The notes: generated by a model from the letters alone, not told the origin. A stretch of 64,000 nt of DNA from Orbicella franksi (GCA_964199315.1 OZ116700.1:13454001-13518000), one strand, 5' to 3'; shown: positions 16,501-38,100, counted from the stretch's first letter. Numbers and translations: made by a program.

Positions 16501-19500
16501 TTCTTGAGCATGGAGCGAGCCAGTGATGAAGAAGTTCTCAGGTAAACAACATATAGACGCGATTGTTCTGACAATGTCGTAAATTATGTCTCAATTTATA
16601 ACGTTTGCCAAGATGGCCGTTAAAGAGTTAAAGTCAAAATATGGAACTTTCTTATGATATTATGGGCTCATACCAATGCAAAATGAATTTTTTGCTCTAC
16701 TTTTTCATTAAGCGGCACCTGAACTCCATACATGTAGTCGGTAGCAAAAAAATCTCAAGATTTTATCTCAAGACTTTATCGATACAAGGAGCCTTATCTT
16801 TCATAGTACAGAGTAGCCAGGTGCAAGACTGATACTGTGAATTCACAACTAGCTAGCGAGAAAACCGATTTGAATAATTGCATGCAAAACGCTCATTCCC
16901 AAAATTTCCACTGTATTTGTGAAAAGGACCTTTGTCCCAGTTTAACTATGCGACTGTTCTGTCAAAAATAAGCTGAGCTTCGCAGTCGATCCTGATAAAC
17001 GGCCATATCCGTTGTAAAATTAACTTTTTGTTTTGTGCTGTTCGTACATAGACTGCAAGGACGCTTAGAAGCAATAAACGCTGAAACGAAAATTATGGAG
17101 GACTGGCGTGAGAAATGCAACATCGTAGAGACTCACATGGACGCTGCTGATGCAATAATACAAGAAGGAAAGAAAGCAAAGAGTCACGATGAGATAGAAA
17201 GCTGTTACAACAAGCTGAAGGTGTGGGTCTGTTTCATGTGCATAAGAAGACCGTGCCATGGTCTCATTTGAAAGATAAAAATGTGACAAAATTTTTGGTC
17301 GTTGTATATCAAAAACTATATAATAGGTGAGAAATGGTAGCGATATTATATCGCGTGTTATTAAATATAGAGTGATTTTCCATTGTACTTGTTATGTTTG
17401 TGGATGTTTCTGCTTCTGACGCTGCTCATAGTTGCTTGGGACAACTTCAAGATCAGTTTGAGCTTATTGCGAACGTGAGGTTTTCTTTTTGGTTAGACTG
17501 GTTTTGCAAAACTTAACTCACGGCAGTCACAATATTTTGTCAGGGAAAACATTAGCTACGCAATAAACTCGTAAAAATTCAAAGGAAATTAAATCAGAAT
17601 AGGCCATTTCCGAGATACATTCAAAACAAATCTAAGTCCCTCAAAATGAGTTTGTCTTCCATGAAAAAGAACCTGTAGAGGGAACACATTTTCATATGAA
17701 TGGTTTTGCAAGAAGACTCTTTTGACACAGAGGCAAAAGGCAAACTCGAGAATGGCCTATTATACATAAGCGGCACCGAGGGCGGAAAAACGCAAATTAC
17801 GGAGTCGTTTGATTGCTTGAATGAGTGACTCAGGGCTTAAAGCAAAAGCAAAGGTCTGTGGTAGTCAAGGAGAAATTTTATGCATTTTTTTTTTCTTATT
17901 TTGTCACGAGATATTTCGTTGTTAGGTGAAAATTATGTAAATGCGCTGTAAAAAACCCAGTTCTGTATTCTTATCGACAATACAGCAATGAGTCAGGTCA
18001 AGAAAATAATGTAATTGCTGGCTCATCTTTGGGTTTACATGCAGTTTGAAAGACAGATTTTAATTTGTTTCATTCCTTTAATTTAGTGTACTCATTATTC
18101 ATTTTGGCATGTTGAACTTTAGGACCTAACAAAGGACCTTGGTGATACCGAACCTGAGTTGAATGACACTTTAGATCACGGCAGAAAGTTGTCCTCAAAC
18201 AAAGACCTGAGTGACGGTAGTCGTCAAGCTGTTTCCGATGATGTTGTTCTCCTGGAAGAAAAATGGAAGGCCGTCATGAAAGTATCCCAAGAGGAATACG
18301 CCAGGTACGTCCATAGCTCGTACTGAAGGCTGAAGCGTACCGCCTGACCAATAGTAGAAAAACAAATAGATTCTGAACGATTTTTATAATGCTTGCTGTT
18401 AGCGATCTATTCAGTGGGATAATATAAAGCTCGATTGATTTTGAATGTGCATTATTCAATGACGTGTTTCGTTCAGCTGTTTTAACTTTTGTGAGTTATT
18501 GCAGACTTGGAGTCGAACTTGGGGCTTCTCAAGCAAAACAAAGAAACATAGCGACTTGGCACGAGCGATGCGACACTCTCCATGAATGGGTGAACGACAA
18601 ATACGTAAGGCTGCGTTCCCGACCGACCTCACCTGAGTCATCATTTGGAGGAATAAAAAGACAGCAAAGCGTCATCGAGGTAAGCTTGCATGTGGACTAT
18701 AAATAACAAGTATTTCCTCATTTTGGCCCATGTGTTTTTTCAAAGGAAGTGTTTACATTTGGTTTCATTTTACATCGTAGTTCGTTATGATTCCAGCAAA
18801 CGGTTTTGAGTTTGGCACGGGTTTCGTTATGACCTGACTGACTGTTAGTTTTAAAATTTTTACTCCCTCTTCCGTCTAACGCTTTGTTTTGATAGACCGC
18901 GATAGAAAGTACATAGCTTAATGTAGAAATTGTAAATCTACAGTAGACGAGTTATTTTGTTTTTGTCGTCGTCGTCGTCGTCGTTGTTGTTGTTTTTGAG
19001 AAGGAGGTAGCCTGTAATAATATGACTGAGAGACTTTCTTTATGACGGTTTGAAACGTTTTTCCAGGTACTCTGTTCTGATTGATTCGCATTTGACTGTC
19101 TGCTTATAGGATTTAGTTAAAGATTTGGTGACTAAACAAGGTGAAGTAAACGAAACCATTGACGAGGGAAATCAGATTATCGACGACGATTCCATCCCTG
19201 AAGGAGAAAGGAAACAAGTCCACGAAAAGATGATCGCACTTCATGACGACTGGAACAAACTGGCTAATTTGACTTCCGGGAAACAACAAAGGTTGGTTGG
19301 TCGAGATATGGAACTTTACAAAGAAAATGTATTAACTACTTCTAATTGTATCTTTCTAGCCGAGGAATGCACTACTATTTGTTTCAAATGTAATGCTTAT
19401 CTTTGTGACTTAACTATCCATATTCTGCTTTGCTCTTACGAAGAATGAAAAAGACTGAAAGATCTTCATAGCAAACGTATTTGTTTGTCACACTAGCTTC

Positions 19501-20132
19501 AATTTTCGCGTGGGTTTTAAACTGTAAGGGGACAAGGAAGTTGTTTGATTAAAGCTGACCTGAGTTCAGGCTTTTGTCTCCATCTATCTCAGCTCACATC
19601 ACAGCGTTTGTTGTTTCTAGTGTCCAAGTTCTACTTCTTGAAAAGGAACAGCAACACTTGGACAAGACCCAAAATTGGAGAAGAAAGATAGATCCTCTCA
19701 TGATGTGGATTTCATCAGCGGAGAACAGAGTGAACACCCAGTTTGAAATTGCTCCAGATCTCGACACCGTGAAGAAGCAAAAAAATGATCTTGAGGTAAA
19801 TCTTCACATGCCTTTATTCTTTGAAAATTATGTTAGTATTTAAAAAGAACTGTCTCTAAGCATTTCCCTAAGGATACATTCTATGGTGTTGATAGTCCAT
19901 CAAATCCAAATTAAGGAGCATAAGAATAGATAATCTCACTCTCTTAAATGACCATCATTTAGTCTTAAATTTTTCGGAGTTCCTAAAGCACATTAGACGT
20001 CATTGAACATTTGCAAAATGAAGCTTTGGTTTGACTGACCTTCTGAATGATTGATTAATTGATCGATACAGGGATTCGTTGATCGGTTGATCGACCGATC
20101 AAGTTACTGGCTGATTGGCTTTATGAGAAATA

Positions 20133-20199
<67 letters not shown>

Positions 20200-23100
20200 C
20201 ACTGCAGGATTTCAACACCGAGATGTTATCCCATCAACGCGAAGTTAGCGACGCTCTGGAGACTGGGGACAAACTTTTGAAAGACTCTGAACTTCCAGAG
20301 GATGACAGGACCGCAATACAGAAAGAAGTCCTGGATCTTGGTCACCGCTGGGAGAATCTAGAGGAGTTAGTCTCGTGGAAAACCGAAAGGTAGTAGGATA
20401 TTTGTCATATTCGTTAACTGAGCTTCATCATTCTAAATGAGTAAGTCTAATAAGCAATTTCTTTGTCTTTTTGTCACTTTCAGTAGATCTATAGCTGCAT
20501 TTGGTATTTTTGTCCGTGTTTTTGTACAATACCATGATGAAAAGGTCGATACCTCCCTCGAGGGAGAGATCGAGGCAAGAACACGATAATGCAAAAGAAA
20601 GATGTTTGGAATGTTTTGTGAAAATCCTCGGTGAATAAAGGGTTTTCGGCGCTTTCTATGAACAATATTCATAACTGAACTGACGGGCATAACAAGTTAA
20701 TGCTTCCCCGTTGAGCCTCTTTGCCGATTTAAACGAGACCATGCTTTCTCTCTTATCCCAGAATTGATGACACGATTCAGAAACTCAAGATGCAGCAAGA
20801 GGACAAACTGCAAAAGTGGCACGAGGGCGTAGATGAAGTCAATGTATGGGTGACAAAGATAAGAGTAAAGGTTGAATCGCCGATGAGACTTGCAACTGAT
20901 GTGGACTCCGCTTTAGAACAAATGGACGACTTTCAGGTTTGTTGCTGTTATTTTTATTCACATAGTGTCTTGCGGCAGAAGCCTTTCTGTTGCCATTGTG
21001 CCTTGATTAGGAAATTACTCAGCCACATTAAAATCTCCATTTGCCAAAAGTGGTCAGCCAGCAGATATTCGCTGCCTTTACGGCGCGAAAAAATTATTTA
21101 GTTTTTTTTTTCTTGCTCTCCAAACTTTCGGGTGCTTTAATTACTCGAGAGATGCACACTGAGCATGAACTAATTATTCGTTAAACTTGGAAGTATTTTT
21201 GTGGAAGCAGGTAAGTTTGAAAAATGCCAAGTACTCCTCGCATGATCAAGTCCCCCGATGGCAGCTGCATCAGTTTCAGAAAAATAAAACAATGTTGAGA
21301 CTTATTTCAGAGTTAAATACATGTAAGTTTGCCGTTTGTTCCCATCGTAAAAAAGGACGTTATCAAAGATGCTCCGTTGTATCAAGAAAAAGTCACCTAT
21401 CTAAATGAGTTCAGTGGCAACCTAGTGTCCGACCCATGTCTTGGCGAAGAAGAAAGAAGAAATGTGCGCGAGGAAACTGTGATCTGCAATGAAAACTGGA
21501 ACGATCTGGTTAACCTCGCCAATGCTCGACAAGCCAGGTAACTGAGTATTCCCTTTGCTGGCCATATTGTTTTTACATTACCTTGATAAATAGTCTGTGC
21601 AGACGGCGTACAAAGGGAACTGGGACAAGTGAAGAAGTTGGGCGCGAGTGAGAAGGAAAGAGCTCTCAAATTCCCCCTCCTACCTTGCCTTTTTACGTCT
21701 ATTAGTCCAATAACGCCATCGTAAATGCAATAGGTTGAAGTTACTCACTTTGCGTGGCTTCAGCATTATCCTAAACGGCAAAAATGTAATTTATGATTAG
21801 CTCTGGAAGAATCATTACTGATAATGGTGGTGGTGGTGGTGGTGGTGGTGGTGGTGGTGGTGGTGGTGGTGGTGAGCGTACTGACACAAGTAGCGTCGAA
21901 CTGTTTCAGCTGTTAATACACGTTAAGGGGGATCTCTAGTACATTGAGACTTGCGGTTGGAAATGCACGAAAATATTTCAGTCTACTTCAATCAGTAAAA
22001 TTTCTTGATACTTTCCAGTTTGTATTTTTAATGCAGCAAGCTTAAGCTCTTTTTTCTCTTTTAAGAATGGAGGAAAATCTTGACAAATTAGAACGACAAC
22101 AACAGGATACTTTGGAACGCTGGAGGATTCGTTCAGAAAGATCGGGACTGGCGTTAGATAAGCTGGAAGGCCAAATATCAGTTATTGATGATCCAATAGG
22201 AAATAACCTAGAGACAGTAAGGAGGCAGGAAGATGCGTTTGAGGTAGGCTCGGAGTAACTTGTATTTGTCTTATCTTGACCTGCATTCCATGCGGTACCT
22301 AAGTAAGACAGGTTACGTGTTACACTAGCCTCCTACTCGGACACTCTTAGGGCTCGTCACGCAATCTTCTTCGTCCTCTTGACGAACCCAAAGAGCGTCT
22401 GCGTAGGAGACTATTGTTGCACATGCTTTGATGAATCCAAGTCACTGTACCAGTCACAGGACGACGGGTTCTATTGACACCAATTATTCAGCCTAAAGCG
22501 GTTTTGGTTTATTAACTGGAACCATTGACATTCAACGTTCTTTGTTAAAAAGGTTTATTTCTGTATTTATCAAGTAATCGTGGAAGATATTATAACTGTG
22601 TATGTTTAGAGAATAACCTTTTTTATCAATGCCAATTGTATCTTTGTCAACTTCTGGTGTTGCTCTGTTTTCGTAGATATTTGCAAACGAAGTGGAACTG
22701 AACACGCCTCAGATGATTGACACAATTGCATTAGGCGAGAAAGTCAGGAAGGATCCAAAGCTCACCCAAAAACGCAAAGATGAGGTGGACGAGCATCTCG
22801 ATTCATTGACAGCACGCTGGGACAGAGTCAAGGATTTTATGGCGTTAAGAAAGGAAAGGTATGTAGAGAGATATAGGGTGCATATCGTTTAGTTACCTTT
22901 TTAACAAATAGTAATAATTTTTCATAATACTAATAATGCATTCTTTGTTCGAGTAGACCTTGACTTCTAGTGATAACAAAATACTGTTTATGCAGATGAG
23001 CAGTGTTTGTTTTCCTTTTGAACATTGTCGCCACTGTCTTCGCTAAGTTGTCATACGGTTGTTTTTATCCTTACGCCTTAAGGAAAGCCATCCTTTACTT

Positions 23101-26100
23101 TACCGTTGCTTAACTCGGGTTCTCTTTTTTCCTACGTACAATATTCAAGGCTTGGCGAAGCTTCTAAAAGGTTGCAAAGGGAGAGGAGAGACAAACTTCA
23201 TGAATGGGAGGAAAGACTGAGCAGTTTCGACAGCTTTTTGCGTAAAGCAGAGAGGGAGACAGAGAGACTCGAACCAATAGGAGACGACTTGGACACTGTC
23301 AAACGACAAAATGAGGACTTCGAGGTAAGATTTTTTTTATTCCTAGGAAAGAGTTTTCCTTTCTACAGAACGTATGGGTATTGATATTTTTTCATGACTT
23401 CCGCGCCCATTTCCCTTTGTGAGACCCGGCGTGTGTGGAGTCTGGCAAATGATTTATAAATCTGGTGACATAGTCTGTTTGTGTAGCTGCTAACATGTTA
23501 GTTTCATGAGTGCTTATGACTCTCTGATGAAGGATCTTTCTCTTTCCTCCAAATATTAGCAGTCGGCGGGACTTCTTATTGGACAGCAGAAGAAAGTGTA
23601 TGATTTTGAGAATTGCGCTGACGATTTAGCAACAGATCCCGCAATCGATCAAAAGTCCAAAGAGAGCATAGAAAATGACAAAAACAACCGTCTTGAGCGA
23701 TGGGCGAGGGTCGTCGACAAGATTAATAGTCACCAGGCTAAGTAATAACAATGCTCTATATTGGAAGTACAGGTTATATCATAAGTATGGGTAATGAAAT
23801 GGTCATTGTAAACCAGGCGCTGCATGCAGTTTGGTAACCTTGGAAAGCGAAAGTCACTTAGTAGTACACGAAAATCATTTAGCGACAACTGAACTTTTTC
23901 TGCCCCTGGTGTATGATTCAAGTGATTAGCGTTTCTTTAGACAATTATTGGATGGGGTTTTTGTGATATCCAGAATAATCAAGGTGCAGGTAGAGGTTAT
24001 CAGCCGAAGCCAAAGGTTGAGGCTGATAAACCTTACCGTGACCTTGATTATTCTAGATATCACAAAAAGCGAATCTAATAATTGTTTTATTATACATTGA
24101 ACGAAGTAAAAAATGTTTTGTCGTGTTTTTTGTTTCTTCGCTAACGGCAAGCAACACAAAGCGCGCGAACTTGACATGATTTCCCTTAGAAATTATGCAA
24201 CGCGGTCACGCATGACACGAATATCCGTGACCTTGAGTGTCCTTGACATGATTATTGTATAATCTGCAGCTAGATGACGTCACAGGTGCTGATTTCGAAA
24301 ATTCACTGTACGCTTTCGGCCAATCGGAAAAGGGATAACGAGTTCAATGTATAATAAAGTAGCTTATCAGTAACGAGGATTGTGGTTGTTATTATTCTTT
24401 GCGACAATAATATCTGAAAAGCAATACGCCTTGGAAAATCAAAGAAGAACAAACTTAACACTATTCTACATCAAACGTGAAAAAATGCCGCGAAGGTAAT
24501 ATAGTGTTACACCAGTATAATTACTTTTCCATGCATACAAGTTCTATCTCATTCCCCATGTATCTAAACAACTACAGTGAGCGTCAGTCTCCTCGTCGAG
24601 TTTAGAACGGTTGATTCGTAGTAGTATGCCGATCTAAATTCTTGTGGTAGGCCATTCAGCAAACACGTCCCTGAACGAAACATACAAGTAATAAAATTGT
24701 CATAATATTACTTACAGGCTCGAAGAAGAGCTTTTGAACTTGGAGAAAACTGAAGGGGAGTTTACGAGGTGGAACGACCAGCTTGTGACAATCCAAGAGG
24801 ACGTTTCGAAAGTTGAAAGTATCTGTGAGCAAGAAATAGCTCCCGATCTGGAGACACTTGAACAGCAAAGAAAGGAGGCCAAGGTGGGTCTTTGATAGCG
24901 TGTTTTCTTTACACCATTTCCATAAGCAGCAACCCTTAACAAGGACGTAGAATTTCAATCTCAAAGACGCCTGTACGAGGATGAATAGCCATATTTTTTC
25001 AGTTGACGTTGTCCTTGAACGCAGTTTTGATTATCATACGGTGTGTTTGAACTATCAGAGAAGCATGGAAGTAAACAGGGCGTTATCCAAACACTCTCAC
25101 TTATTTAACGTGAAATCTTCCTGTTTTCTTCTATCTTTTCTCTTTTCTTTTGCCTGATTACTTTCGATACTATAATGCTAATGCATTTCGTCATCTTTCT
25201 GCAGAATTTGAAAGAGGACGTGGCCCTGCTGGACCCTCAAATTGAAGAATTTCTCAAGAGCTCTGACAGTTTGCTCGATAATAGCGATTTACCTGACGAG
25301 GATCACCAGACGGTTGAGCGCGAGTCTGAATTGCTCGAGAAACGTTGGAACAAAGTAAAGAACGACGCTAATTCAAGAGAGCCAAGGTTTGTGAATACGA
25401 TAAAATTACATTTAAGCGAACGAACTAAGGGTCAGGGCTTGAGCACTGTGTTCTTTAGTAAGACATAATTCTCTCACTGCCCCACCGCACAGGATTATCC
25501 ACATGTACGGCTATAATATCAGCGAAATGTCAGTCGCGCACACTGGGATTGACCTGCAATGGCCATTTGATGTCACTTCGTACTGCAGAAGCCAGTACCA
25601 GTGCTATCTGGACCATCTGGTTTCAACAGACCTAATCTTAACTGTTTCTATGTTTCATTATCTTTTATGGCAGAATCGAAGAAGCGTACAGAACCGTACA
25701 GAAGGGTCAAAAAGCCTTGTTGGATGAATGGAAAAACTCTTGTAACTCCACTCTCAAGTGGATAGCTGATTCTTCTGCGCGTGTGCAGGCACAAGATCAT
25801 ACCGCTCCAGACCTCGACCACGCGCGGGCTCAGAAGCAAGAAATTGAGGTAGAAAAAAAATGCTTGTAGCAGTGATTTATTTAAAGCAATAAAAACAGCA
25901 GAAGAAACCAGTCAGGAAATACTAGTCTACTCAATGATAAATTTCTTAAAAGAACGAGAACAGGGAAATTTCATCAAATGTCCGGATTGATTTAATTTAT
26001 TGTTTTTGTCCTTGAGCTGAGACAGACAATCTTTTTTATGTAGGATTTAATGAAGGAAATTAAACAATACGATAAACAGATGGATAAACTTGATCAACTT

Positions 26101-29100
26101 GGAGAAAAGATTGTTCACGACCCGAACATGCGTGACCTGGAAAAAACACTGGTAACTAACGAGAAAGCATCCATCATTGGACAATGGCAAGGACTCCTAT
26201 CAAATACAGAAGCCACCAGAAACAGGTACGAGCACTGTCTGCTAAAATAGCTTTCCATGGAGTTTTAGATTTATCTAAGCAGACGCGTCAACGTAAATAA
26301 AAAGATACATTTTTTGACGTCTGGATTTGTAAAAGTTGCCAGGAAATGATATGGCCGGTAACCAATCAGGAGCCGAGAAAGACAATGGGCTATCGTTTGG
26401 AGAACAATGGATGCTATTGCTCATTAAATCCAAGATGGCGCCTTGAAAAATCGGACCAATCAGGAGCCGAATTAAGAATTCAAGATGGCGGCGCCCACAA
26501 AAGTCGGCCATGTTGGAAAACAGCCCACCAGCCTCGACGGAGGACTGGGATCGGTCTCACGGATTTCCATGGCGACACAAATCACGCCAGGGTCACGCAA
26601 GTGGCCATGATGAAGACTGAAAGACTTGGGTCCGACTGCAGCTTAGATAGGGTGGTACAAAGCATGGTGGGACAATGACCTCATCGGGAACCAATCAGAA
26701 TGAATTAAAGTACTTACAGTGGTTGGCTTCCCCAGTCCCCCTCTCTTAAGGAGAGCACTAAATCCCGAGCGTGTCGATAAGTGGGGCACTCCCCGTGGTA
26801 TTAATTTTCTCGGTAGAGATGAAAAAAGGAAGGGGGTACTTCCGAAAGTCAATGATCACACAGAATTGAAAATGAAAAAAACTATTTTTCATCACTGAAC
26901 AAAGGGTAACAAATCCAGTAACTTACTTGTTTTCCCATGATCCCTTCCATTACGATTCAATTCTGTGTGATCATTGACTTTCGGGGGTACCCCCTTCCTT
27001 TTTTCACCTCTACCGAGAAATACCTCGGGGAGTGCCCCTCTCAGTCTTCATCATGGCCACTTGCCGGACGGACCTCTGTGGTTTAGGACTACAGGACACT
27101 GTAAGTATCGATTTTGAAGTTGCATGACATTATTTTGCGTGACCCTGGCGTGATTTGTGTCGCCATGAAAATCCGTGAGACCGATCCCAGTCCTCCGTCG
27201 AGGCTGGTGGGCTGTTTTCCAACATGGCCGACTTTCGTGGGCGCCGCCATCTTGAATTCTTAATTCGGCTCCTGATTGGTCCGATTTTTCAAGGCGCCAT
27301 CTTGGTTTTGGAGAACAATAGCATCTGTTGTTCTCCAAACAATAGCCCATTGTCTCTCTCGGCTCCTGATTGGTTACCGGCCATATAAGCGTGCATTACT
27401 GCTAATGATATCCTTGCTAGGAACTGGTGTTGTTTCGTGGTGAGTTTGCGATAGTTACTCACCGTTATAGAAAAGATTTTTTCAGTTTTCACTAGCGTGT
27501 CGTAAAATGTCACGTCAGCATTCTGTCCCAAGAATACGCCATGTCACTCAGCCTTTTTAGCACCTTCTGTTGTAAAACCTTGGTTTTGTAAGAAGTTTGG
27601 CGAAACGATTTCGAAGTAACTTGAGTCAGTAATCGTGGTAATTCTTTACCTGAAAGATTGGATAAGCAAATTGAACAACTGGAAAGGGAGCAGCAGGAAA
27701 AGATGAAGATGTGGTCAAAAAAGACTGAGCCTCTGGAGACGTGGCTGGTTAAGAAGGAGACCATCGTGGAGTCTTACGAGCCAATCGGATATGACATCAG
27801 TTATGTAAAGGGACAAAGTGAAGATGCTCAGGTTGGTACTGATTCTCCCGAATCGTGTTCCATTTCTTGAACTCTCAGTCACCAGTAATGGACATGAAAG
27901 TTCTCCCAGTACATCACATACCACACAGGGAACAAAAATTGTGTGAATTTTTTTAACAAAACGTCCAATGATTCATATTGCGTATGTTTTTCAGGCGATG
28001 ATCACAGACCTACTCCACGAGCAGCCGAAGTTCGCTGAGATGACGGACCTCGGTAACCAGCTTACAACCGAGCCTTGTGTAGGATTGGAGGAACGGGTCA
28101 GGATACAGAAAGAGATGCAGTCACTGCACGAGAGATGGGACGGTTTGTATGGATCAGCCACCTCCCGGCACGACAGGTAATGGCTGAAATTTTGAGAAGA
28201 TATTCTTTGCTTAAAATAAAGTTATTTTGGATTAATAAATTGTGACATAAGTCATCAGTACGACGTTCATAGATATTTTCAAGTGTTACACCAAAAATCG
28301 TCTAAGTTATTGAACTGTTGAATTCTTACAATGGACTATTATTGCAAAAAAAGAGTATTTGTGGGGTTGCTTTGCTTTGCGTAGTCCACTCTTTAACACT
28401 GTTTCCATTTATTGTCCTGCTTAAACATATTGTATTATGGCCTTTGGATGGTTTTTGGAAAAATTTCGGTGACGAAAGCAACTATATTCTTGTACCTGAA
28501 CAACTAGGTGTACCTCCTTTAGACGTATAGTCGTCGTGTTGTGATACGAAATTGGTATGGCATAGCTTTTGGTGAACCGCGTTACTTTTACTTTTTAAGG
28601 ATTCAAGAAAGGCTAAGAATATTAGAAGACGAGCAAAGAAAGCTGGAGGAAGAAAGACAAAAATTGGAAGAGGAAGAAAGGCAGAGGAGAGCGGAAGAGG
28701 AGAAGAGACGACAGGAAGAGATTGAAAGAAGACGAAAAGAGGATGAGGAGAGAAGAAAACGGGAGGAAGAGGCAAGAAAACGCAGAGAAGAGGAAGAACG
28801 AAAACGGAAAGAAGAAGAGGAAAGGCTACGAAGAGAGGAGGAAGAGGAAAGGAAAAGGAAGGAAGAAGAGGAAAGAAAACGAAGGGAAGAAGAGGCGAGG
28901 AAAAGAAGAGAAGAGGAAGAGACAGCAAGGAAAGAGGAAGAAGAAAGACGAAAGCGCGAGGAAGAAGAAAAAAAGCGAAAGGAAGAGGAAGAACGTAAGA
29001 GGCGGGAAGAAGAAAGAAAAAAGAGAGAGGAAGAAGAACGAAAGAGAAGAGAGGAGGAGGATAGAAAGCGGAAGGAAGAACAAGAACGACGGAAAAGAGA

Positions 29101-32100
29101 GCAAGAAGAGCGACGGAAGAGGGAAGAAGAAGAACGAAAGAAGAAGGAGGAAGAGAAAAGGAAGCAGCGCGAGGAAGAGGAAAAAAAGAGAAAAGAAAGA
29201 GAAAGGAAACGAAAGGAAGAAGAGGAAAAGAGACGTCAGGAGGAAGAGGAACGGAAAAGAAAGGAGGCTGAAGAAAAACGAAAGAAAGAAGAGGAAAAGG
29301 TTGGTTGTATTGACAGTAAATATCTTAACTTTTCAAGCATTACCAGACTTTGCCTCGTTGTTGTCCATGCTCTGCTTGTTCAAAGGATGGATAAAGCCTT
29401 CCACCGTCCACTCTATAGAGATTTATACGGTGGATAGCGTTATCCAGCCTTTGAACAACTGTGCCCCGCCAAATAGCAGGTTAATGTCCTGGGTTGTGCA
29501 TATTAGCGTAAGTTTTTGAGTCCAAAATTCATGAAGCGTGATTGGCCGCTTCGGAAATGAACGAAAGCAAATCTCGGGTTCCGCGTGGCGACGTGTAAAT
29601 TCATGGTCAAGTAAAAACCCTCACTTCTTTTCGAAGCCAAAGTTTGTCTTCCGAGGCGCTATACTCGTAAAGGGATAAACATGTATGTTGAAGACTTTAT
29701 CACACCCATGGTCATACGGGATCAAAATGTTTGAAGTAATATATCAAACACGAAAGACCGTGTTTGACCACATTTCCAAACACCGAGAGGACAGTTGAAA
29801 ATACGACGCGTAGCGGAGTATTTTTGACGAACTTCGAGGTGTTTGGAAATGTGTTCAAACACTGTCTTGAGTCTTTGATATATCTTCTCAATCGAAACTA
29901 AAACTAAGAAGATCAGATATCCAAACACCGTCACGGTCGTGATTTCCTTTGTTTAAATTTAATGAATTATTAGTGAGTTTGAGAATGTTGTTTCAATTCA
30001 GACAAAAGCTTTCGCTTATATCGCACCTCAACCTCGCGTTCAGCTGGTTGAGCAGGAGCCAAGACTGTTCAGCAGTCCAGTGGACGAAGTTATTGTGTCT
30101 GTTGACGAGAATGTTGTCGAGGCGGCAGCAGAACCCGATGGAATTGTATTAGATGGAAGGCTACAGGACTGGAGAAACGAGGCAGAGAAAATGAAGGCGT
30201 AAGTACCGGATGACTAGTCACATAAATTTTTTGTATCGATAGTGAAAGCATAATAACCAAACTCAGTTGCAGAAGAAAAATTAATTTACTTGGTTGTCAT
30301 TCCATTGAAGCCCTGATTGATGTTGTCGTTTCCGGTTTTCGTTGTTGTTGTTGTTGTTGTTGTTGGGTAAGTTTCTTTATTTGCAAAGATGATTTCTGTC
30401 CTTAGCTCATGACATTTATATTCTTCACTTCATCACTTGCCATACTTATTCCTTATGATGTTCTCTGGCTGTTACTCTGGTTATTATCTCCTGGTAAAAT
30501 TTCTATTGAGATCGTGAATCCGGGGGCCACTGGTTTCTCAAGCGCTACATTGATGAAATAAAGTTAAACTCGTTGAGAAATTCAGTAACATTTCGCGCCA
30601 CTTACCCCAGCGCATTGGTCACACACCTTACTATTAAGCCGTCCATGAGTTGTATTTTGAATTCAATGCAATTTGGCCAGTTGTCCAAACGTAGTCGGTA
30701 TTGCCTCTTTTTAGGTGGATAAAGGATCAAGACAACACACTACCCGAAGAATCCGACGAGGACAACATTGCAACTCTTATTGAGAAAGAAGGCAAAATTG
30801 CGGTGAGCTGCAGGCATTTACACTGTCATATGAGTTAGGAAAACCAGAAAATTAGAAAACACATTTCATAAGAGAAACTATTCACTGATGACATTCCCAA
30901 GCAAGGCGTTGTTCAGGAGGCTACATTTCTTTTTTCAATTAAAGTTTCTTTTGGTTCAAAAGACAAGTATGTTTTTCAGCATGGATTTAAACTTTCATTG
31001 CTTCTATCTCCCTATAGAATCTTGAGAGGGAACTACCTGTCTATGATAAACGCTACCGTGATCTGGATAGAGACTTTGAAGAGCTCATTAGCGACAAGAA
31101 TATAAAAGAAGATCAACGGGAAGAAATCGTCGAAGACATGGATAACGTCAGAGATCTCTGGCATTCTTTGAACAAGAACAAAGATACCAAGAAAAATAGG
31201 TAACGACAATGGCTAAGGGACCAAATGAGATCTATGAAGTCGTTCGCAGACGCTCTTTTGACCGCGTCAAATATCTCGCCAGTAGCTTAACGAAGGCTTG
31301 CATGGGAAGCTTTTAGCTATCTGGTTAAGATTTGATTACACATGACTTTGCCAGCTGCATGAGTCAGTCTGTTATAACGTTTTCACAGAAGTTCTGTAAT
31401 CGTTGTTGGTTTTGTAGCCCTTTATGCTAATTCTATGTTTTTTGTTGTTTTTGTTGTTCTGTTGACATGTCTGTAACGATCTTCAATAGATTGATTGATT
31501 GATTGATTTTACAGATTTGTCAGTAATCCAAATAATTAAATGACAAACCTTGAAAACGAAGGCCAGGATTTCTAACGTGAAGACTGTGGATTCCTTTTGT
31601 GTAGAATAAAGAAAATGATCTGGGATGAAGAACAAAAGAAAGCTGGGGAGCTCGCGGGATGCCGTGTAAACTTACAAGCTGTGAAGGACTGGATAGAACT
31701 ACGAGATAAAGAACTTGAGGCCATGGATCCCATTGGAATTGATCTAAAAACGTTAGTCAGGCAAAAGGAAGACATGAAGGTATCATAAGAAATGTTTAAG
31801 GATATCTTTTGGACACTGTTTGTAAGCTAAAAGTCATGGGCATACTTTTTTTTTGCCGTCTCTGTCTCGACCAATTGGGACCAATTATAGAGCGTCTGAT
31901 CACTCACGTGGCCGGCACACAAGCAAATTTACTGAAACAAAAGAAAGTGTTTACATAAGAAAGAATTCAACTCCCACAGGATTGGTTTAGTACGATAACA
32001 TGGCCGCCGTTTCATTGTTTGGGAACACCAATATGGCCACCGTAACTTCATGTGAAAACGCTCTGTAGGAGACATGCTGTTCCAGCTTTTAACAGTCACA

Positions 32101-35100
32101 TACTAAACCAAAATCAGTCGTCCTCTCCCGCTTGGCGCTTGTGGTGTGCCTTTGCCTTGAACTCTTATTGCATGGTTTCTTATGTTATTTACTTCGATTA
32201 CGTCCATGCCTTTTTACGGCAGTCATCAAAAGGTCGCGCCATTTTACAGCACGTCGAAGTTCATGTACTTAGTCCCCACTTCACTTAATATATACATTTG
32301 GTCGGATGACTTGATTGTTAATCACGATTTCCTTCTCAGAGCGCCACTGTGAGACCTTTGTCTTTTTTTTTTTCCTTCGTAGCAATTCTCTAAGCGACTA
32401 AATGACTACGAGCCAAGATTTACAGAAGCAACAGATTCTGCCTATAGGTTATGTAAGGACCCTGCCTTTTCTGATGAGCAAAACAAAGTTCTTCGACAGG
32501 ACGCAGAAGACTGCGAAACACGATGGGATAATGTGTTGGAGAAGGTCAAAGACCGCATGGACGAGTAAGTAACTGATTTTTTACCTTGAGATTTTACTCA
32601 GTACATGGGACGCACAGTCACAGGTATCCCAAGTCCCTTGGGAGTCCTGCACATTATATTATATGGAGAGGAAAACACTGAAACTAAAACTCGTCGATAT
32701 CGCCTTGAAACGGTCCCAAAACGCCCCAAATACTGTGTAAGGTACTGAATTTCTTTTCCATATTTTGAACTGATATATTCGATCGTTACATTTCCATGCA
32801 ATCTCTTATATTCATCCTGTTATTAATGTTCCCAAGCAGCTTGGGATACCTGTGGTTTAATACCGTGGGAAGTTTGAAATCGCTTTACTAGATTTTAAAA
32901 AAAGATGTTGCCTATCTTGAGTGAAAAATGTTCTGCTTTTTGTTTTTGCTGTTGTCCTTATTTCACCAACCCGGGGTCGATCGTGCTGTTGAGTTTGCGA
33001 AGAGAGTTGTTACATTTCCTTTATTTTTCCCGCAGAATTGTTAGAAAGATCCCCAAGCTTCAAAAAGACCAGAAAGAACTTTTGGAAGAATGGAAAGATA
33101 GGTCCTCTCGCTTCGACAAATCTCTCAAGAAAACAGAAGAAAAACTCAAGGAACAGATATCCATTGGAAGAGAGGTAACCATCGGAGTTATGTGTGCATT
33201 ACCTTCAAAGCCGTGAGAGATCATTTCGGAGGAGTTTTGTTCTTTAACGTTTTCAAACGGCATTAATCTCGATTCGAGTTGTTGATAAGTATCTAGCAAT
33301 CTTTTAAAGCACGCAGGCGATAATAGTTGATCTCAATAAGCGATGGCCTAACAGATGTCGACCAATTTAACTGCCGTGAAAAAAATTGGGAAAATACTCC
33401 ACTGGAACAATTCAGCCAACTGAACCAAAATCGGTTACCGTTAATTCCTTGCTTCCTCAGAGCTGAGATGAAACGCTTACTTTACTCAAACATATTTACT
33501 AAATTTAATATAACTGACTTAAGTAAGGTGATTTTTATCAATAATGACTATTCTAATTCCGACATTTTCTTATTTCATCGCAGATTGGCTTTGAAAAACG
33601 ATTCTCTGAGATCAGGTCTCCAGAACTGACTAAAAGACAAGGAGAAAATAACAACGAGTGGAAACCATCAGTTGACGAGTCCAATGCTAGCCTAAGAAGG
33701 TAAGTATCAGTACTGACTATTGGCAAACCTAGTACTGTATGTAACTGGCTGCTCTTTTCTGGGACAACAAAACTTCAGCAAGGTACTGATATACTCGTAC
33801 TTCGTGTTCACCATCTTTTTTATAATGTTACACACTTATGTAGTTCTCTTATCCATGGCAATATTTTTACTCCTTCAGTTCATTACATTAACATTTATTT
33901 TTCAGAGTTAAAGAAAAGCTTCAAGACATCCAGCGAGACAAGAAAAACCGAAAGTGGTCGATCATCGAGGCGCTGAAAGATGTTATGCATTCCATAACAA
34001 CCAGGTTTCGCGGCGATTCCAAATCTGGAGTCCATCTTGACAAGGTGGTTGACCTGTTGGAAGACCATGAGGTGAAGAGAGTTTTAGCCCTGGTTACATA
34101 GCGTCTAAGATAGACCTCGTGCAATTTTGTCCCGATTGTATGTTTCCTTCTTGAGTTGATGGAAAGAGTTAGGAAGTTCGTTGCCAGAATCGGTTGTCAA
34201 AAGGTCTGACAACACGTTTCACTGGACAGAAAGAATCAGCCAAGCAGGTTTATCCCATGAAAACTCGAAAACATTAGCTCGAATGCAGTTTACAGTGATT
34301 GGGTCCAGAATCCTGTAACCACTTTTTTAGGCTCCATTTTACCTAGCATTCGACACTTTCAAATATAGTCTTTCTTTTCCATTAATTGAAAGTTGTATTT
34401 TTAGGACATCATGACTGATACATCATCAAAACAGAAGGACGCTGATGAACTGATTGCCTTGAGCGAAAACGCTCTCGAGAGCGGCATGTTAGAAAATGAC
34501 CAAGCCAACGATGTTCATGATCGGATGGCAGACTTGAATCACCGATGGAATGGATTAAACATTGACGTCATTGAGCGTGAGAAAAGGTTGGTCTTCGTTA
34601 GATCGTTTCTTTTTTAAAATTTGAATGCTATAGTTTTGAAAACAAACTTTCGGTATCGTTGGGATAGGTCGATTCTAAATTCAAGTTCATTTAATTGTTT
34701 ACACCTATTTCTATTACAGCAAAATGTCTTGCGTTAACGACACTGAAGAAAATAAAATAAAACAAATGCCAAATTACATTAAACAAAAAATAAGTGTGTA
34801 GAGGCCACAGAAACACAAGCTTCCGAGTTGCTCACTTCGACAGTGAATATATTCAAAACTAATTTTAAGCAAAGTTTGATAGCCAAATATTTATCCCATC
34901 AGTACAGCACAGTACGTAGTATTTTGTCCATAACATACGGCGCAATTAAAGAAACTGTAGTAACATTGGTGTTCCTTTTGAAAACATTTATGTATTCCAG
35001 CGTATAGAAATTAGAAATTTTAATTGAGGCCCTCAAACAGTGTAACATCCACGCATCATTGAACGTATTTGGACCGTGTATCCCGGTAGTCTTGAGATTA

Positions 35101-38100
35101 TGAAATCAAGCTTCTGTGTAATAACAGAATCCTTATATAACACTTCAGTCTCAATGCTAACAATGCCACTTATGTCGGCATTTATTAACGTTTCCCGTTC
35201 TACAATAAATGGCGAGATCACTGATTCTTTGTTAGGCATTTTATAACATCTAAGGATAAAAAGTGAATCCACATTTCACCTATAAAACGGTGATTACCCT
35301 TCCACGCAGTCTCCCTCATCGTTAAAATATCGTACACCACACACTGACTTGTTTTGGTTTGGCTGCCCATTAATTCCTTCTTTTGTCTCCTGTGTTTTTC
35401 TCATTGTTGCTGATATTTTTTTTTTCACTTGTGAACTTTTTTTATTTGATCATGTCAAGATAGTCAACGACATTGTTCGAATTCCGCAGTGACAAAGAAA
35501 ATCACAACAAATGTCCCTGTAAACAGCCTCCGCTTCTTCTGTAAACGTAAATGCCAAGCTCAAATATTTGCCGTGATTAACTTGAATGCGATGTTGATTT
35601 ACATTTGCGTGACCTAGACGCATTTGAATGTGCATTCCCAGGTTGTCAACGCGTTCTACGCACGAAAACGTGTTAAATACAACGTGACATCGAGATTTTA
35701 GCTCATTATGGAGCGCGATGATAACGATTTTGAGAAGTCGCTGGCTCTTGCCTCCGCCACAGCCGACTTAATGCAGTACAGGTACATCCCATAACAATTA
35801 TGCAGATGGTGCAAATTGTAGTCTTAATTGAATATGTTACGCCAGGTACAGTGTACATGCATTCTCGCACAACTGTTTTAAACGTGTTACCTTTTATAGC
35901 GATTCACCCAGGCGCTATTTTAAAAAGATAATTCCATTACTAAAAGTCCACATAACGGAAACGAAAGGCTGTAATAACATTATGGAGTTATGCTGCGTCG
36001 ACGATTTCTGAGATATAAACATCTGTTGTGTCTGGATTTTCCTTGATTTTGCCAACAATTTTAGTTCTTGCTCTTAACTACACTATGAAACGAGCTTTAG
36101 TGAGGTTAGATACGTTTTCGACTGTAAGGTTCAAACTAATTTTGAAACAGGAATTATACGAATCTTTTGACAGGTCTCTCATAATTTCGGACATGTTTAA
36201 ATAACAGTGCCTTAACTACAAGTGTTAAATATCTTCGCGCTAATTGAAAACTTGAAAATACGCTGGCATGTTTAAATTACCCGCCGCTGATAAAGACTGT
36301 AATGTACTGTTGGAAAAAAAAAAAAAACATACATGACCTTGCGTAAATTGTGGGAGAAGATTCACTATAACGCACTGATGGCGTGTTATCGATATGAGAG
36401 ATTCCAATGTTGACCAACGTCTAAGTTTTCCGCACGATGTCAGCGCACAGACGGCATTATCCTGATGAAACACCAAGATGTTGAACCTTCAACCAAGGTG
36501 ATATCTGACAATCACCAATCACTACAGCCAGTAAATATTGTGATAAGCAGGCTAAAATGGATCAAATAACGATACGTTGTCTTTTGTAGGCTGGAGCAAC
36601 TTGCCCAAGATATCGAGAGCGAGTACAAGAGGTTCGACTCCTGGCGTGACAAATGCGACAACATGAATCAGTGGCTCACTGAATCGGAGAAACTGATTAA
36701 AAACGAAGAGAAGATTGGATCTGACATAGACGTTCTTCAAGAGCAGATTAAGGACAACCAGGTTGGTTTGAAGTCTTATACCATGCCATAGAAAATACAG
36801 CCAATCAGAATACAGGAAAGCCGTCGCTTACCCCACGGTATTCTACCCAACCTTCCCATCGTGTGCTGCTCGTATGTCGCATTGATTGTATTGGGCACTG
36901 TATTTTCAACGGCATGGTACTAGTGTCTCGTGGGATATTACTTGGTATACCATTCGAAAGCGTTGCGTAAATAGCATTTATCATTGTTCAAGACCATGAG
37001 TCCTCTTCAACCATGCACATGAAAAAAACAAATGATCATTTAAAATACGAGTTCACCATCCGTTTTAATATTAGTCCCACCTATTTAAGAAAAAAACAAT
37101 TTTGTCACTCTGTAACTAATCGGTATTAACTTGAAATTATGTAATGGTACATTGCTATAATTTGGAGAGTTTTTTCCTATCTAAATATGATACGGTTGTT
37201 AAAAATGAACTAAAATATTACAATGTACAATGGTAGACCTTTGTTTGCTTTGGCGAAAACATATATACAGAAAAAATACATTTCGCTGGGTAACACTTGT
37301 AAGGACCTAAGGTAAACCTTTTGCATAGCTGCAAGATTTTGTTTGATTGTCTCTGGCTTAGTCACCTTACATGATGTATGTGCTCGTTACCCACAGCTCT
37401 TTCTGAATGAAGTAAAGGAGTACGAGCCAAAAGTTAACGCGATGGTTCAGGAAAGCCAGGACCTCGTTGACAGTAGCAAGCTGGATAAAACGGACATTGA
37501 TGGAGTTGATAAAACCAAGAATGCCCTTAATTCAAGATGGAAGGCTGTCAATGACCATCTCAAAGAGCGGCAGCAAAAGTTAGTGATGCGCTGATAAACA
37601 CTGTCATTGATAAAAACAACAAAACTGTTAACAGCTTAACATTCAATTAGGTACCATTTAAGGGTTTTCTCTATACTGGTAAATTCTCAGCTCACTTTGA
37701 AGTGTGATAACAAACAATCTAGGCTGCAAAACAGTCGTATTTTTTGCGAATGCGGACGACGATCAATATTCGCAGGAAAGGTCTGAAGCGAATGTAAAAA
37801 CGGCGAGGGAGATTGGGAAGAGACGCTAAAAAATACAGTCGTTTTCTCGCCTCGCACGCCCTTCGGCCGTGTGAGGCTCGCGCGCTTCACACGCGAGGAT
37901 CGAGCTTACGGCGCTTCGCGCCTTCCGAAAACGTCCAAAAACGACTGTTTTGCAGTCTACAAACAATGAAGCTCCCCGCGAGACACGCCTTACGTCAGAA
38001 CTGAAAGGCTGCAGGTAGCTAGCATTTATCATTTATATTGCTATGGAAACCAGATGCCTGCGATAGCGGGGAAATTCTGAGGAATATCAAGTTATCGTTT

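What the first reader, a model, noticed from the sequence alone, without database searches (positions are those of the whole stretch)
28600..29299. About 230-residue ER/K single alpha-helix spliced into the middle of a dystrophin-type rod
Seen: one in-phase exon of E4-5/(R,K)3-4 periodic sequence with no helix breakers. Known: ER/K SAH domains act as stable monomeric helices, levers or constant-force springs in myosin VI/X, caldesmon and INCENP; at 0.15 nm per residue this one would span about 33 nm. Inference: a spring element placed in series with spectrin repeats. I know of no SAH in bilaterian dystrophin or utrophin.
Basis: partly seen in the sequence, partly recalled or inferred. Interest (0 to 1): 0.76.

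Follow-up and report, generated by a model that had tools for sequence, protein, structure and literature searches.

The report
Long charged helix in coral dystrophin-like protein
A reef-coral gene for a giant actin-binding rod protein, a relative of dystrophin, has one always-included exon of 233 residues that are almost all glutamate, arginine and lysine; by prediction it forms a free-standing helix about 35 nm long, and other corals keep it at nearly the same length, so it is a real and selected part of the protein, but of an already known structural type.

Summary
Window 28600-29299 is a 700-nt exon with AG and GT borders. It encodes 233 residues (E101, R64, K42; no Gly or Pro; net charge +2) with an 8-residue charge period.

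RNA-seq from four runs of four studies joins it to both neighbouring exons (860 and 1411 junction reads in the deepest run). Skipping it alone shifts the frame, so it is not a cassette exon.

I found orthologous exons on seven distinct coral-derived contigs (an eighth repeats one of them). All are 198-235 residues long, have the same intron phase and at most one Gly/Pro. Their introns cannot be aligned and their synonymous codons are randomised. Selection therefore acts on the protein, not on a purine repeat.

Sequence features and AlphaFold2 fit an ER/K single alpha-helix. Monomer state and spring function are untested.

The host is not the canonical dystrophin. It has tandem CH domains, about 31 spectrin repeats and no WW-EF-ZZ region. 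The dystrophin-type EF-hand locus lies 6.7 Mb away. That locus gives the best out-of-family matches to this gene's CH2, R1 and R30 exons, so the host is probably a dystrophin-derived paralogue.

None of four partial or short paralogues carries the exon.

Verdict: a real new instance of a known motif in a new host, of moderate interest.

The parts
581..46563 (+). Host gene, from my own splice-aware model: 78 exons, about 4295 aa. It has tandem CH domains (aa ~51-297), R1-R2, a hinge, R3-R19, the ER/K helix, a linker, R20-R31 and a short Cys-Cys/basic tail. There is no WW-EF-ZZ region.
   Evidence: Most repeats are an A exon of about 175 nt plus a B exon of 182 nt. Pfam finds CH and Spectrin exon by exon. 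Only five junctions around the finding are RNA-verified. The 5' start and a few small exons (5977-6060, 44915-44971) are uncertain.
27657..27831 (+). Spectrin repeat 19, A exon
   Evidence: RNA junction 27831>27995; gene model
27995..28176 (+). Spectrin repeat 19, B exon (helices B and C). It ends two bases into the Arg codon that the ER/K exon completes.
   Evidence: Pfam Spectrin matches positions 49-100 of 105. RNA junction 28176>28600. Identity to orthologues is 76-100%.
28600..29299 (+). ER/K exon, 700 nt, protein residues 2641-2873: the predicted single alpha-helix of about 35 nm
29300..30001 (+). Intron. At about 29730-29990 it holds an interspersed repeat that is very abundant in RNA.
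   Evidence: Junction 29299>30002. Contig depth over 29786-29912 reaches about 17000, with many variant letters and loose ends.
30002..30198 (+). Linker exon. It carries a conserved Pro-rich/acidic motif (P-x-P-R...Q-x-P-x-L-F-S-S-P) and then the start of helix A of repeat 20.
   Evidence: RNA junctions on both sides. Five fragment orthologues at 58-88% identity; the alignment of four of them has invariant P9 P11 R12 Q18 P20 L22 F23 S24 S25 P26 W57. No Pfam match.
30715..30802 (+). Short exon that completes the A part of repeat 20
   Evidence: Junctions 30198>30715 and 30802>31018. It matches my A-exon profile weakly (E 0.02).
31018..31199 (+). Spectrin repeat 20, B exon
   Evidence: Pfam Spectrin; RNA junction

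Best explanation
Window 28600-29299 is a constitutive coding exon of a coral gene for a giant actin-binding rod protein, probably a dystrophin-derived paralogue without the dystroglycan-binding end. It encodes 233 residues of near-ideal E4(R/K)4 octads. These most likely form one continuous, salt-bridge-stabilised single alpha-helix of about 35 nm. The helix would run on from helix C of spectrin repeat 19, since no helix breaker lies between them. It would end at a conserved Pro-rich/acidic linker before repeat 20. The inferred role is a semi-rigid spacer placed in series with the spectrin repeats. Under load it would unwind gradually and reversibly at low force, from about 35 nm towards about 84 nm, before any spectrin repeat unfolds. 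The Pro-rich linker would supply the hinge. Shown here: the exon, its inclusion in mRNA, its frame, its composition and periodicity, and its conservation in length and pattern across corals. Inferred: the monomeric helix. More speculative: the mechanical role.
For: Exon and frame: splice junctions on both sides in four RNA runs of four studies, with sense depth equal to that of neighbouring exons. Skipping the exon gives a frameshift and a stop after 50 codons.
Helix features: 90% charged, no Gly or Pro, i,i+4 acid-to-base pairs 11 SD above shuffles, and a charge period of 8.0. Hydrophobic-plus-Ala occupancy of the a/d heptad positions is at most 9% in any register, so there is no coiled-coil seam. 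AlphaFold2 with four orthologues gives helix over residues 2-119 and 124-232 at mean pLDDT 89.
Selection: orthologous exons lie on seven distinct coral-derived contigs (an eighth repeats one of them). They are 198, 220, 225, 226, 232 and 235 residues long, against 233 here. All are 1 mod 3 in length with AG|G...|GT borders, are 82-87% E, R or K, and have at most one Gly/Pro. Between the window and L003 the introns do not align, while the exon is 81% identical in DNA and 85% in protein, with dN/dS about 0.04. Against the more distant copies, codon choice at conserved residues is random (0.46-0.49 observed against 0.44-0.45 expected), yet the pattern persists. The L005 locus is collinear from R17 to R23.
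Mechanics by analogy: the INCENP single alpha-helix has 213 residues and is estimated to go from about 32 nm to about 80 nm; the myosin-10 one unfolds non-cooperatively below 30 pN (PMC4571873).
Against: No biophysical data exist. AlphaFold2 puts a low-confidence break at residues 119-124 and pTM is only 0.32. This could be the usual fold-back artefact or a real kink. Arg outnumbers Lys (64 to 42), and designed AEEEXXX repeats with two or three Arg aggregated (PMC5812594, citing PMC5347031). Identity to the distant orthologues (0.55-0.74) is only modestly above the roughly 0.5 that any in-phase octad alignment gives. For those copies the pattern, length and borders are conserved, not demonstrably each position. 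I did not run the published predictors (Waggawagga, SCAN4CSAH, FT_CHARGE); the scores are my own re-implementation. Minor isoforms cannot be excluded, because 115 weaker joints were not listed.
Confidence: 0.6

Rival explanations
1. The charged helix is mainly a binding surface, for microtubules, nucleic acid or a partner protein. The conserved Pro-rich motif next to it would act as a docking site. It would not be a mechanical element.
For: [quoted passage not shown] The KER helix of CAF-1 binds DNA (PMC10335832, abstract seen). The linker motif P-x-P-R...L-F-S-S-P right after the helix is invariant in five sequences, which suggests a recognition site.
Against: Net charge is about zero (+2 to -4 in four orthologues), unlike basic microtubule- or DNA-binding helices. 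Away from the first 20 or so residues, what is conserved is pattern and length, not particular side chains. PMC5812594 argues that direct binding through such helices is probably rare.
Confidence: 0.15
2. The segment self-associates. Either it folds back as an antiparallel helical hairpin, or it pairs with a second molecule through staggered charge blocks and so dimerises the rod.
For: AlphaFold2 breaks the helix at its midpoint, residues 119-124. Blocks of four acidic then four basic residues could zip antiparallel. Arg-rich designed repeats aggregated (PMC5812594).
Against: There is no hydrophobic seam: a/d occupancy is at most 9%, and there are no bulky hydrophobic residues after position 76. 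The midpoint break has pLDDT below 50, and mid-helix fold-backs are, from my own knowledge, common in such models of very long helices. (E4K4)n-type peptides are the experimental model of monomeric helices (PMC5812594).
Confidence: 0.1
3. It is a tolerated low-complexity expansion, a disordered polyampholyte linker with no requirement beyond keeping the frame.
For: The DNA is purine-rich with degenerate short periods. The genome has other long E/R/K-coding stretches, at C5:16.10 Mb and C10:20.58 Mb, and 4317 first-look candidates. Such helices are predicted in 0.5-3.5% of eukaryotic proteins (PMC5812594).
Against: Length stays within 198-235 residues in eight orthologues. There is at most one Gly/Pro. 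The 8-residue register is coherent over the whole exon: identity is about 0.5 at shifts of 8, 16 or 24 but 0.04-0.13 at shifts of 4 or 12. All this holds while synonymous sites are randomised and introns cannot be aligned.
Confidence: 0.1
4. It is an intronic purine-rich repeat that only looks like an exon.
For: All three forward frames are open across it.
Against: Hundreds to thousands of spliced reads join it to both neighbouring exons in the ER/K frame, and an RNA contig spans it.
Confidence: 0.01

Closest known systems
INCENP single alpha-helix (chicken residues 503-715)
   Same: A very long E/R/K helix (213 residues, about 32 nm at rest) that links two functional parts of a protein. It was first mistaken for a coiled coil and is proposed to be an extensible tether (PMC4571873).
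   Different: The host is a chromosomal passenger protein, not a spectrin-repeat rod. Its N-terminal half binds microtubules. Its sequence is less regular; the coral exon is a coherent array of E4(R/K)4 octads.
Single alpha-helices of myosin VI, VIIa, X and Dictyostelium MyoM
   Same: ER/K-type salt-bridged monomeric helices that act as lever extensions and constant-force springs (PMC4183817, PMC5378345).
   Different: They are much shorter (MyoM 97 residues, PMC4571873; roughly 40-70 for the others, from my own knowledge). They follow a motor and IQ lever and do not lie inside a rod of three-helix bundles.
Designed (E4K4)n / (E4R4)n peptides, and natural ER/K helices used as engineered spacers of 10-30 nm
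   Same: The same octad pattern. The 30-nm natural spacer is of similar length (the engineered spacers are cited from my own knowledge, Sivaramakrishnan and Spudich).
   Different: PMC5812594 states that E4[K/R]4 octads are extremely rare in natural eukaryotic helices of this kind and are not found as repeated patterns. This exon has 12 strict octads and a dominant 8.0-residue period, conserved in all four orthologues tested.
Dystrophin (canonical) and its hinges
   Same: An N-terminal tandem-CH actin-binding domain and a long rod of spectrin-type repeats interrupted by non-repeat segments. By my count the insertion lies after repeat 19; from my own knowledge, human hinge 3 lies at that position, which may be coincidence.
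   Different: There is no WW-EF-ZZ dystroglycan-binding region. It has about 31 repeats instead of 24, mostly 119-residue units built from 175-nt and 182-nt exon pairs. The interruption is a 233-residue charged helix plus a Pro-rich linker, not a short Pro-rich hinge. The canonical locus lies elsewhere in this genome. Cnidarians are reported to have a complete dystrophin (PMC10293626).

Membership tests
ER/K (charged) single alpha-helix | About 75-80% or more of residues are E, K or R, with Glu rather than Asp as the acid | tested here: met
   E+R+K is 89% and there are only 3 Asp. Orthologues have 82-87%.
ER/K (charged) single alpha-helix | Opposite charges at i,i+4 and i,i+3 in excess of what the composition alone gives | tested here: met
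   There are 89 acid-to-base i,i+4 pairs against 46.7 +/- 3.7 in shuffles, and the charge period is 8.0. The published predictors were not run.
ER/K (charged) single alpha-helix | No hydrophobic heptad seam and no helix breakers | tested here: met
   Maximum a/d occupancy by hydrophobic residues plus Ala is 9%, and there is no Gly or Pro.
ER/K (charged) single alpha-helix | Predicted continuous helix | tested here: inconclusive
   AlphaFold2 gives helix over 2-119 and 124-232 at pLDDT 89, but with a low-confidence break at 119-124 and pTM 0.32.
ER/K (charged) single alpha-helix | Monomeric, highly helical and non-cooperatively melting in solution | not testable with these tools
   This needs CD, AUC or SEC-MALS, and SAXS on recombinant protein.
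Dystrophin/utrophin | N-terminal tandem calponin-homology actin-binding domain | tested here: met
   Pfam finds CH on three exons, each below the curated cut-off on its own. PDB matches cover CH1 and CH2, but summed bits rank plectin 113, beta-spectrin 106, utrophin 93, alpha-actinin-4 91 and dystrophin 87. The domain is therefore generic, not dystrophin-specific.
Dystrophin/utrophin | Rod of spectrin-type repeats | tested here: met
   Pfam finds Spectrin on B exons. A profile of 28 B exons hits alpha-spectrin (38 bits), dystrophin R1 (37) and utrophin R1 (35).
Dystrophin/utrophin | C-terminal WW, EF-hand and ZZ dystroglycan-binding region | tested here: not met
   The modelled last exon runs into a stop at 46561-46563. 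EF-hand_2 and EF-hand_3 exons occur only at C3:6.69 Mb(-), C14:18.50 Mb(-) and C3:28.89 Mb(+). The 3' end of the gene was not checked with RNA.
Dystrophin/utrophin | Closest relative in the same genome is the canonical dystrophin locus (paralogy) | tested here: met
   The best out-of-family matches of the CH2 exon (71%), the R1 B exon (28%, E 0.07) and the R30 A and B exons (47%, E 1e-5; 28%, E 0.006) lie in gene order at C3:6745943-6739866(-). That is 44 kb upstream of the EF-hand exons. The matches are short and two are weak.

The most novel reading that the evidence does not exclude
Reef corals have turned a duplicated 5' piece of dystrophin into a giant two-segment tether. Its two spectrin rods would be joined by a selected module: a 35-nm constant-force-spring helix plus a conserved Pro-rich docking or hinge motif. 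That would make it the first mechanical rod protein with a single alpha-helix in series with spectrin repeats. It would also be the first long, coherent natural E4(R/K)4 octad array kept over a long span of coral evolution.
Probability: 0.3. Interest if true: 0.6.

Novelty: new member of a known kind. Interest (0 to 1): 0.45.

Why it matters
Single alpha-helices are accepted spacers and low-force springs, but the well-studied cases sit in motors, INCENP and a few others. Here one lies inside a spectrin-repeat rod, in series with domains whose stepwise unfolding is the textbook model of cytoskeletal elasticity. This gives a natural construct (R19-helix-linker-R20) for testing how a non-cooperative spring and cooperative bundles share load. 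It is also an unusually regular natural E4(R/K)4 array, a pattern said to be almost absent from natural helices of this kind (PMC5812594), and it comes with comparative data on which features selection keeps: length, register and absence of helix breakers. Finally, it marks a coral-lineage family of dystrophin-derived genes without the dystroglycan-binding end, whose cell biology is unknown.

Tried and rejected
1. I searched the 5.8-billion-protein collection with residues 1-80 of the exon. The 8000 candidates passed on were swamped by unrelated E/K/R-rich proteins and none scored. This says nothing about orthologues.

2. An exhaustive HMMER search with the 65-residue linker exon returned only five exon-sized fragments and no full-length annotated protein. 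I therefore could not get a source's name or a full-length orthologue. Exon-sized queries cannot reach proteins of 4000 residues, and a joined model protein has no reference to hand in.

3. I tested whether the ER/K exon derives from an A-type repeat exon. It has the same entry and exit phase and starts R-I-Q-E-R-L-R-I-L-E in register with the R-L-E-E... start of A exons. A profile of 25 A exons scores it only marginally above shuffles (4 of 200 shuffles reach it; 26-33 of 200 for the orthologues). This is inconclusive and is kept only as an inference.

4. I searched four paralogues for the exon. They are a tail-to-tail 3' partial copy (window about 71400-60233, minus strand), an upstream 5' partial duplicate (C3:13.418-13.441 Mb, interrupted by retrotransposon ORFs), a short paralogue (C3:4.369-4.380 Mb) and, from exon hits only, its partner at C3:4.334 Mb(-). 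No E/R/K-rich open frame was found in the 144 kb plus 120 kb I read.

I used exon-wise searches of the genome instead.

6. dN/dS against the distant orthologues could not be computed, because synonymous sites are saturated. I replaced it with a codon-identity test.

7. I did not run a homodimer complex prediction. I do not claim binding, and 'no support' from that tool is not evidence.

8. Literature searches that combined single alpha-helix terms with spectrin repeat, nesprin, dystrophin or plakin listed no paper holding both among those shown. This is weak negative evidence only.
Full report
WHAT IS THERE

The window is coral nuclear DNA. Runs that hold it are labelled coral metagenome or carry coded coral-associated organism names. 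It is G000:C3:13454001-13518000 of a 497-Mb assembly.

At 28600-29299 lies an open stretch bounded by ...ttttaag|G and AAG|gttggt. In the frame fixed by the neighbouring exons it encodes 233 residues: E101, R64, K42, Q9, L5, A5, I3, D3, T1. Ninety per cent are charged and the net charge is +2. There is no Gly or Pro, and the 8 bulky hydrophobic residues all lie within the first 76.

Acid-to-base pairs at i,i+4 number 89, against 46.7 +/- 3.7 in shuffles. The Fourier spectrum of charge has one dominant peak at 8.0 residues. Twelve strict [ED]4[RK]4 octads are present.

Tandem Repeats Finder sees only degenerate periods; the 24-nt period has 62% matches. The DNA is therefore an old, codon-diversified array and not a fresh microsatellite.

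IS IT AN EXON IN mRNA?

Yes. I laid two raw poly-A RNA-seq runs (X21, X23) and the contigs of two metatranscriptome runs (X1, X5), from four studies, on 27500-31300.

- Junction 28176>28600: 860 reads in X21, 22 in X23, and one contig each in X1 and X5.
- Junction 29299>30002: 1411 reads, 56 reads, and contigs.
- The neighbouring junctions 27831>27995, 30198>30715 and 30802>31018 are equally clear.
- An X5 contig of 702 nt covers the exon end to end.
- In the stranded run X21, depth in the orientation that the flanking exons show for this gene is 710-1133 over the exon, against 370-1630 over its neighbours.
- Of the X21 reads laid, 82% are 99% or more identical, so that run is the same species.

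Extra reads of the opposite mate orientation inside the exon, loose ends at 28802 and 29024, and a 578-read odd joint 28823/29007 look like cross-mapping from another E/K-rich transcript. I do not take them as an isoform.

No exon-skipping joint is among those listed, but 115 weaker joints were not shown. The exon is 700 nt (1 mod 3). Skipping it alone shifts the frame and gives a stop after 50 codons. Skipping it together with the next exon (897 nt in all) keeps the frame.

THE HOST GENE

I built a splice-aware dynamic-programming model, using a codon log-odds score trained on the obvious exons plus generic splice matrices. I corrected it at the RNA-verified acceptor 30002.

The model has 78 exons from 191/581 to 46563 and gives about 4295 residues. 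Its parts, in order, are:
- tandem CH domains;
- two repeats;
- a hinge of about 100 residues;
- seventeen more repeats;
- the ER/K exon (residues 2641-2873);
- a linker;
- about twelve further repeats;
- a short tail ending in a Cys-Cys/basic/aromatic stretch.

Most repeats are 119-residue units made of an A exon of about 175 nt, entered two bases into a codon, and a B exon of exactly 182 nt. Pfam finds CH and Spectrin exon by exon, and nothing on the ER/K or linker exons.

The ER/K exon occupies an A-type phase slot. It begins R-I-Q-E-R-L-R-I-L-E, in register with the R-L-E-E... start of A exons. A profile test of that relationship is only marginal.

No helix breaker separates helix C of R19 from the charged stretch. 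The stretch ends at ...EEEK | TKAFAYIAPQPR..., a Pro-rich then acidic segment. Helix A of R20 follows.

IS THE HOST DYSTROPHIN?

Not the canonical one. The model ends at a stop with no WW-EF-ZZ region. Dystrophin-type EF-hand_2 and EF-hand_3 exons occur only at C3:6.69 Mb(-), C14:18.50 Mb(-) and C3:28.89 Mb(+).

Exon-wise PDB searches of five CH exons sum to plectin 113 bits, beta-spectrin 106, utrophin 93, alpha-actinin-4 91 and dystrophin 87. A profile of 28 B exons hits alpha-spectrin, dystrophin R1 and utrophin R1 about equally.

Within the genome, however, the best matches outside the gene's own small family all fall, in gene order, on the minus strand of C3:
- the CH2 exon at 6745943-6745872 (71% identity);
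- the R1 B exon at 6742631-6742482 (weak);
- the R30 A and B exons at 6740640-6740506 and 6740039-6739866.

These lie 44 kb upstream of the EF-hand exons. It also fits the report that cnidarians have a complete dystrophin (PMC10293626). I therefore call the host a dystrophin-derived paralogue, with moderate confidence.

CONSERVATION

The linker exon found five exon-sized fragments in an exhaustive search. The R19 B exon found nine more at 80-100% identity.

Eight contigs that carry them show an E/R/K open frame in the expected place. The contigs come from TARA Pacific metagenomes, other ENA assemblies and Logan contigs. Two of them (L037, L039) hold the same exon, so there are seven distinct orthologues. 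The fragment on L007 also ends in E/R/K sequence.

The exon is 198, 220, 225, 225, 226, 232 and 235 residues long in these orthologues, against 233 here. In every case it is 1 mod 3 in length, has AG|G and |GT borders, is 82-87% E, R or K, has at most one Gly/Pro, and starts R-(I/V/L)-Q-(D/E)-R-L-(R/K)-I-L-E. The charge period, computed for the window, L003, L004 and L005, is 7.9-8.0. L005 is collinear with the window from R17 to R23.

Between the window and L003 the introns do not align at all. The exon aligns in register at 81% DNA identity, against 66-71% off register, and 85% protein identity, with dN/dS about 0.04. Against L004 and L005, codon identity at conserved residues (0.46-0.49) equals the random expectation (0.44-0.45), so synonymous sites are saturated.

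One caveat comes from my own control. Any in-phase alignment of two such octad arrays gives about 0.5 identity, so the 0.55-0.74 seen for distant copies shows conserved pattern, register, length and borders, not conserved individual positions. For L003, L036 and L040 the in-register excess is clear: 0.72-0.88 against 0.52.

The linker that follows is conserved as a real motif, with P9 P11 R12 Q18 P20 L22 F23 S24 S25 P26 invariant in five sequences.

PARALOGUES

None of the related genes I could read has the exon:
- The tail-to-tail neighbour (window about 71400-60233, minus strand) copies only the last five or six repeats.
- A gene 30 kb upstream (C3:13.418-13.441 Mb) copies the CH domains (84-93% identity per exon) and about seven repeats. 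It then runs into retrotransposon ORFs.
- A short paralogue at C3:4.369-4.380 Mb has CH domains plus about six repeats.

The linker exon and the R19 B exon are single-copy in the genome. Other long E/R/K-coding stretches exist, at C5:16.10 Mb and C10:20.58 Mb.

STRUCTURE AND MECHANISM

AlphaFold2 with the four-orthologue alignment gives helix over residues 2-119 and 124-232 at mean pLDDT 89. There is a low-confidence break at 119-124 and pTM is 0.32. I read the break as the usual fold-back of very long helices, but it keeps a hairpin alive as a rival.

The lack of any hydrophobic seam (a/d occupancy at most 9%) argues against a canonical coiled coil. At 0.15 nm per residue the helix spans 35 nm. 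Fully unwound at 0.36 nm per residue it would span about 84 nm. Those per-residue figures are the ones used for the 213-residue INCENP helix, and the myosin-10 helix unwinds non-cooperatively below 30 pN (PMC4571873; PMC4183817, abstract).

From my own knowledge, spectrin repeats unfold cooperatively at forces of a few tens of pN in AFM. If so, a helix in series would yield first and reversibly.

This is inference. A docking role for the helix and its Pro-rich neighbour, self-association, and a merely tolerated linker are the rivals.

COMPARISON AND NOVELTY

Helices of this kind are predicted in 0.5-3.5% of eukaryotic proteins and are enriched in long ones (PMC5812594). One in a giant cytoskeletal protein is therefore not surprising in itself.

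What is unusual is the host: I found no paper linking such a helix to spectrin-repeat, nesprin, dystrophin or plakin rods. Also unusual are the length, which is at the top of the characterised range, and the coherent E4(R/K)4 octad array, which PMC5812594 calls extremely rare and not repeated in natural examples.

I class it as a new member of a known kind, of moderate interest.

Noticed in passing
window 29730-29990: The intron after the ER/K exon holds a short interspersed repeat. RNA contig depth over it reaches about 17000, with many sequence variants, loose ends and internal joints. It is evidently present in many transcripts genome-wide.
   Followed up: no
window 30002-30130: A linear motif right after the charged helix is conserved: Y-I-x-P-(E/Q)-P-R-V-Q-L-V-E-Q-E-P-R-L-F-S-S-P. 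Ten of its residues (plus four elsewhere in the exon) are invariant in five coral sequences. It has no Pfam match and could be a docking or phosphorylation site.
   Followed up: partly
window 7600-28176 and 31018-43626: The exon architecture is strikingly regular. Each repeat of about 119 residues is an A exon of about 175 nt plus a B exon of exactly 182 nt, with constant phases. This points to tandem duplication of a two-exon unit.
   Followed up: partly
L023-L026 (G000:C3:13414001-13454000): An upstream partial duplicate of this gene's 5' part has CH domains 84-93% identical per exon and about seven repeats. It runs into retrotransposon-like ORFs (endonuclease and reverse-transcriptase type) at about C3:13443100-13447300. 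It may be a truncated gene or a pseudogene.
   Followed up: partly
L027-L028 (G000:C3:4369500-4380100) and C3:4334005-4334796(-): A short paralogue has CH domains plus about six repeats, and its last repeats match R29-R31 of the window gene. A second set of matching exons lies on the opposite strand 35-43 kb away, which echoes the tail-to-tail pair in the window.
   Followed up: partly
window 60233-71400, minus strand: The tail-to-tail neighbour gene copies the last five or six repeats. It ends in a similar Cys-Cys/basic/aromatic tail (...NNCCGAFLKKRLFPIWSYN against ...SECCFLRIMRRKFGVFQ).
   Followed up: partly
G000:C3:6693842-6745943, minus strand: This is probably the canonical dystrophin locus. 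It has a CH2-like exon, repeat exons and, 44 kb further on, EF-hand_2 and EF-hand_3 exons. Two other loci with dystrophin-type EF-hands lie at C14:18.50 Mb and C3:28.89 Mb.
   Followed up: partly
G000:C5:16099012-16102279 and C10:20582086-20582742: These are other very long E/R/K-coding open frames in the same genome, with frames of up to 1094 codons at the C5 site. One of them may be the source of the reads that cross-map inside the exon.
   Followed up: no
window 26301-27440: The intron between R18 and R19 holds two copies, in opposite orientation, of an element that encodes nearly the same peptide (...RLENN-CYCS-PRWRLEKSDQSGAELRIQDGGAH...). It is probably a transposon-derived inverted pair.
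   Followed up: no
window 56146-58400: Open frames on both strands look like a mobile element. My gene-model run wrongly chained them to the gene's 3' end before I trimmed it.
   Followed up: no
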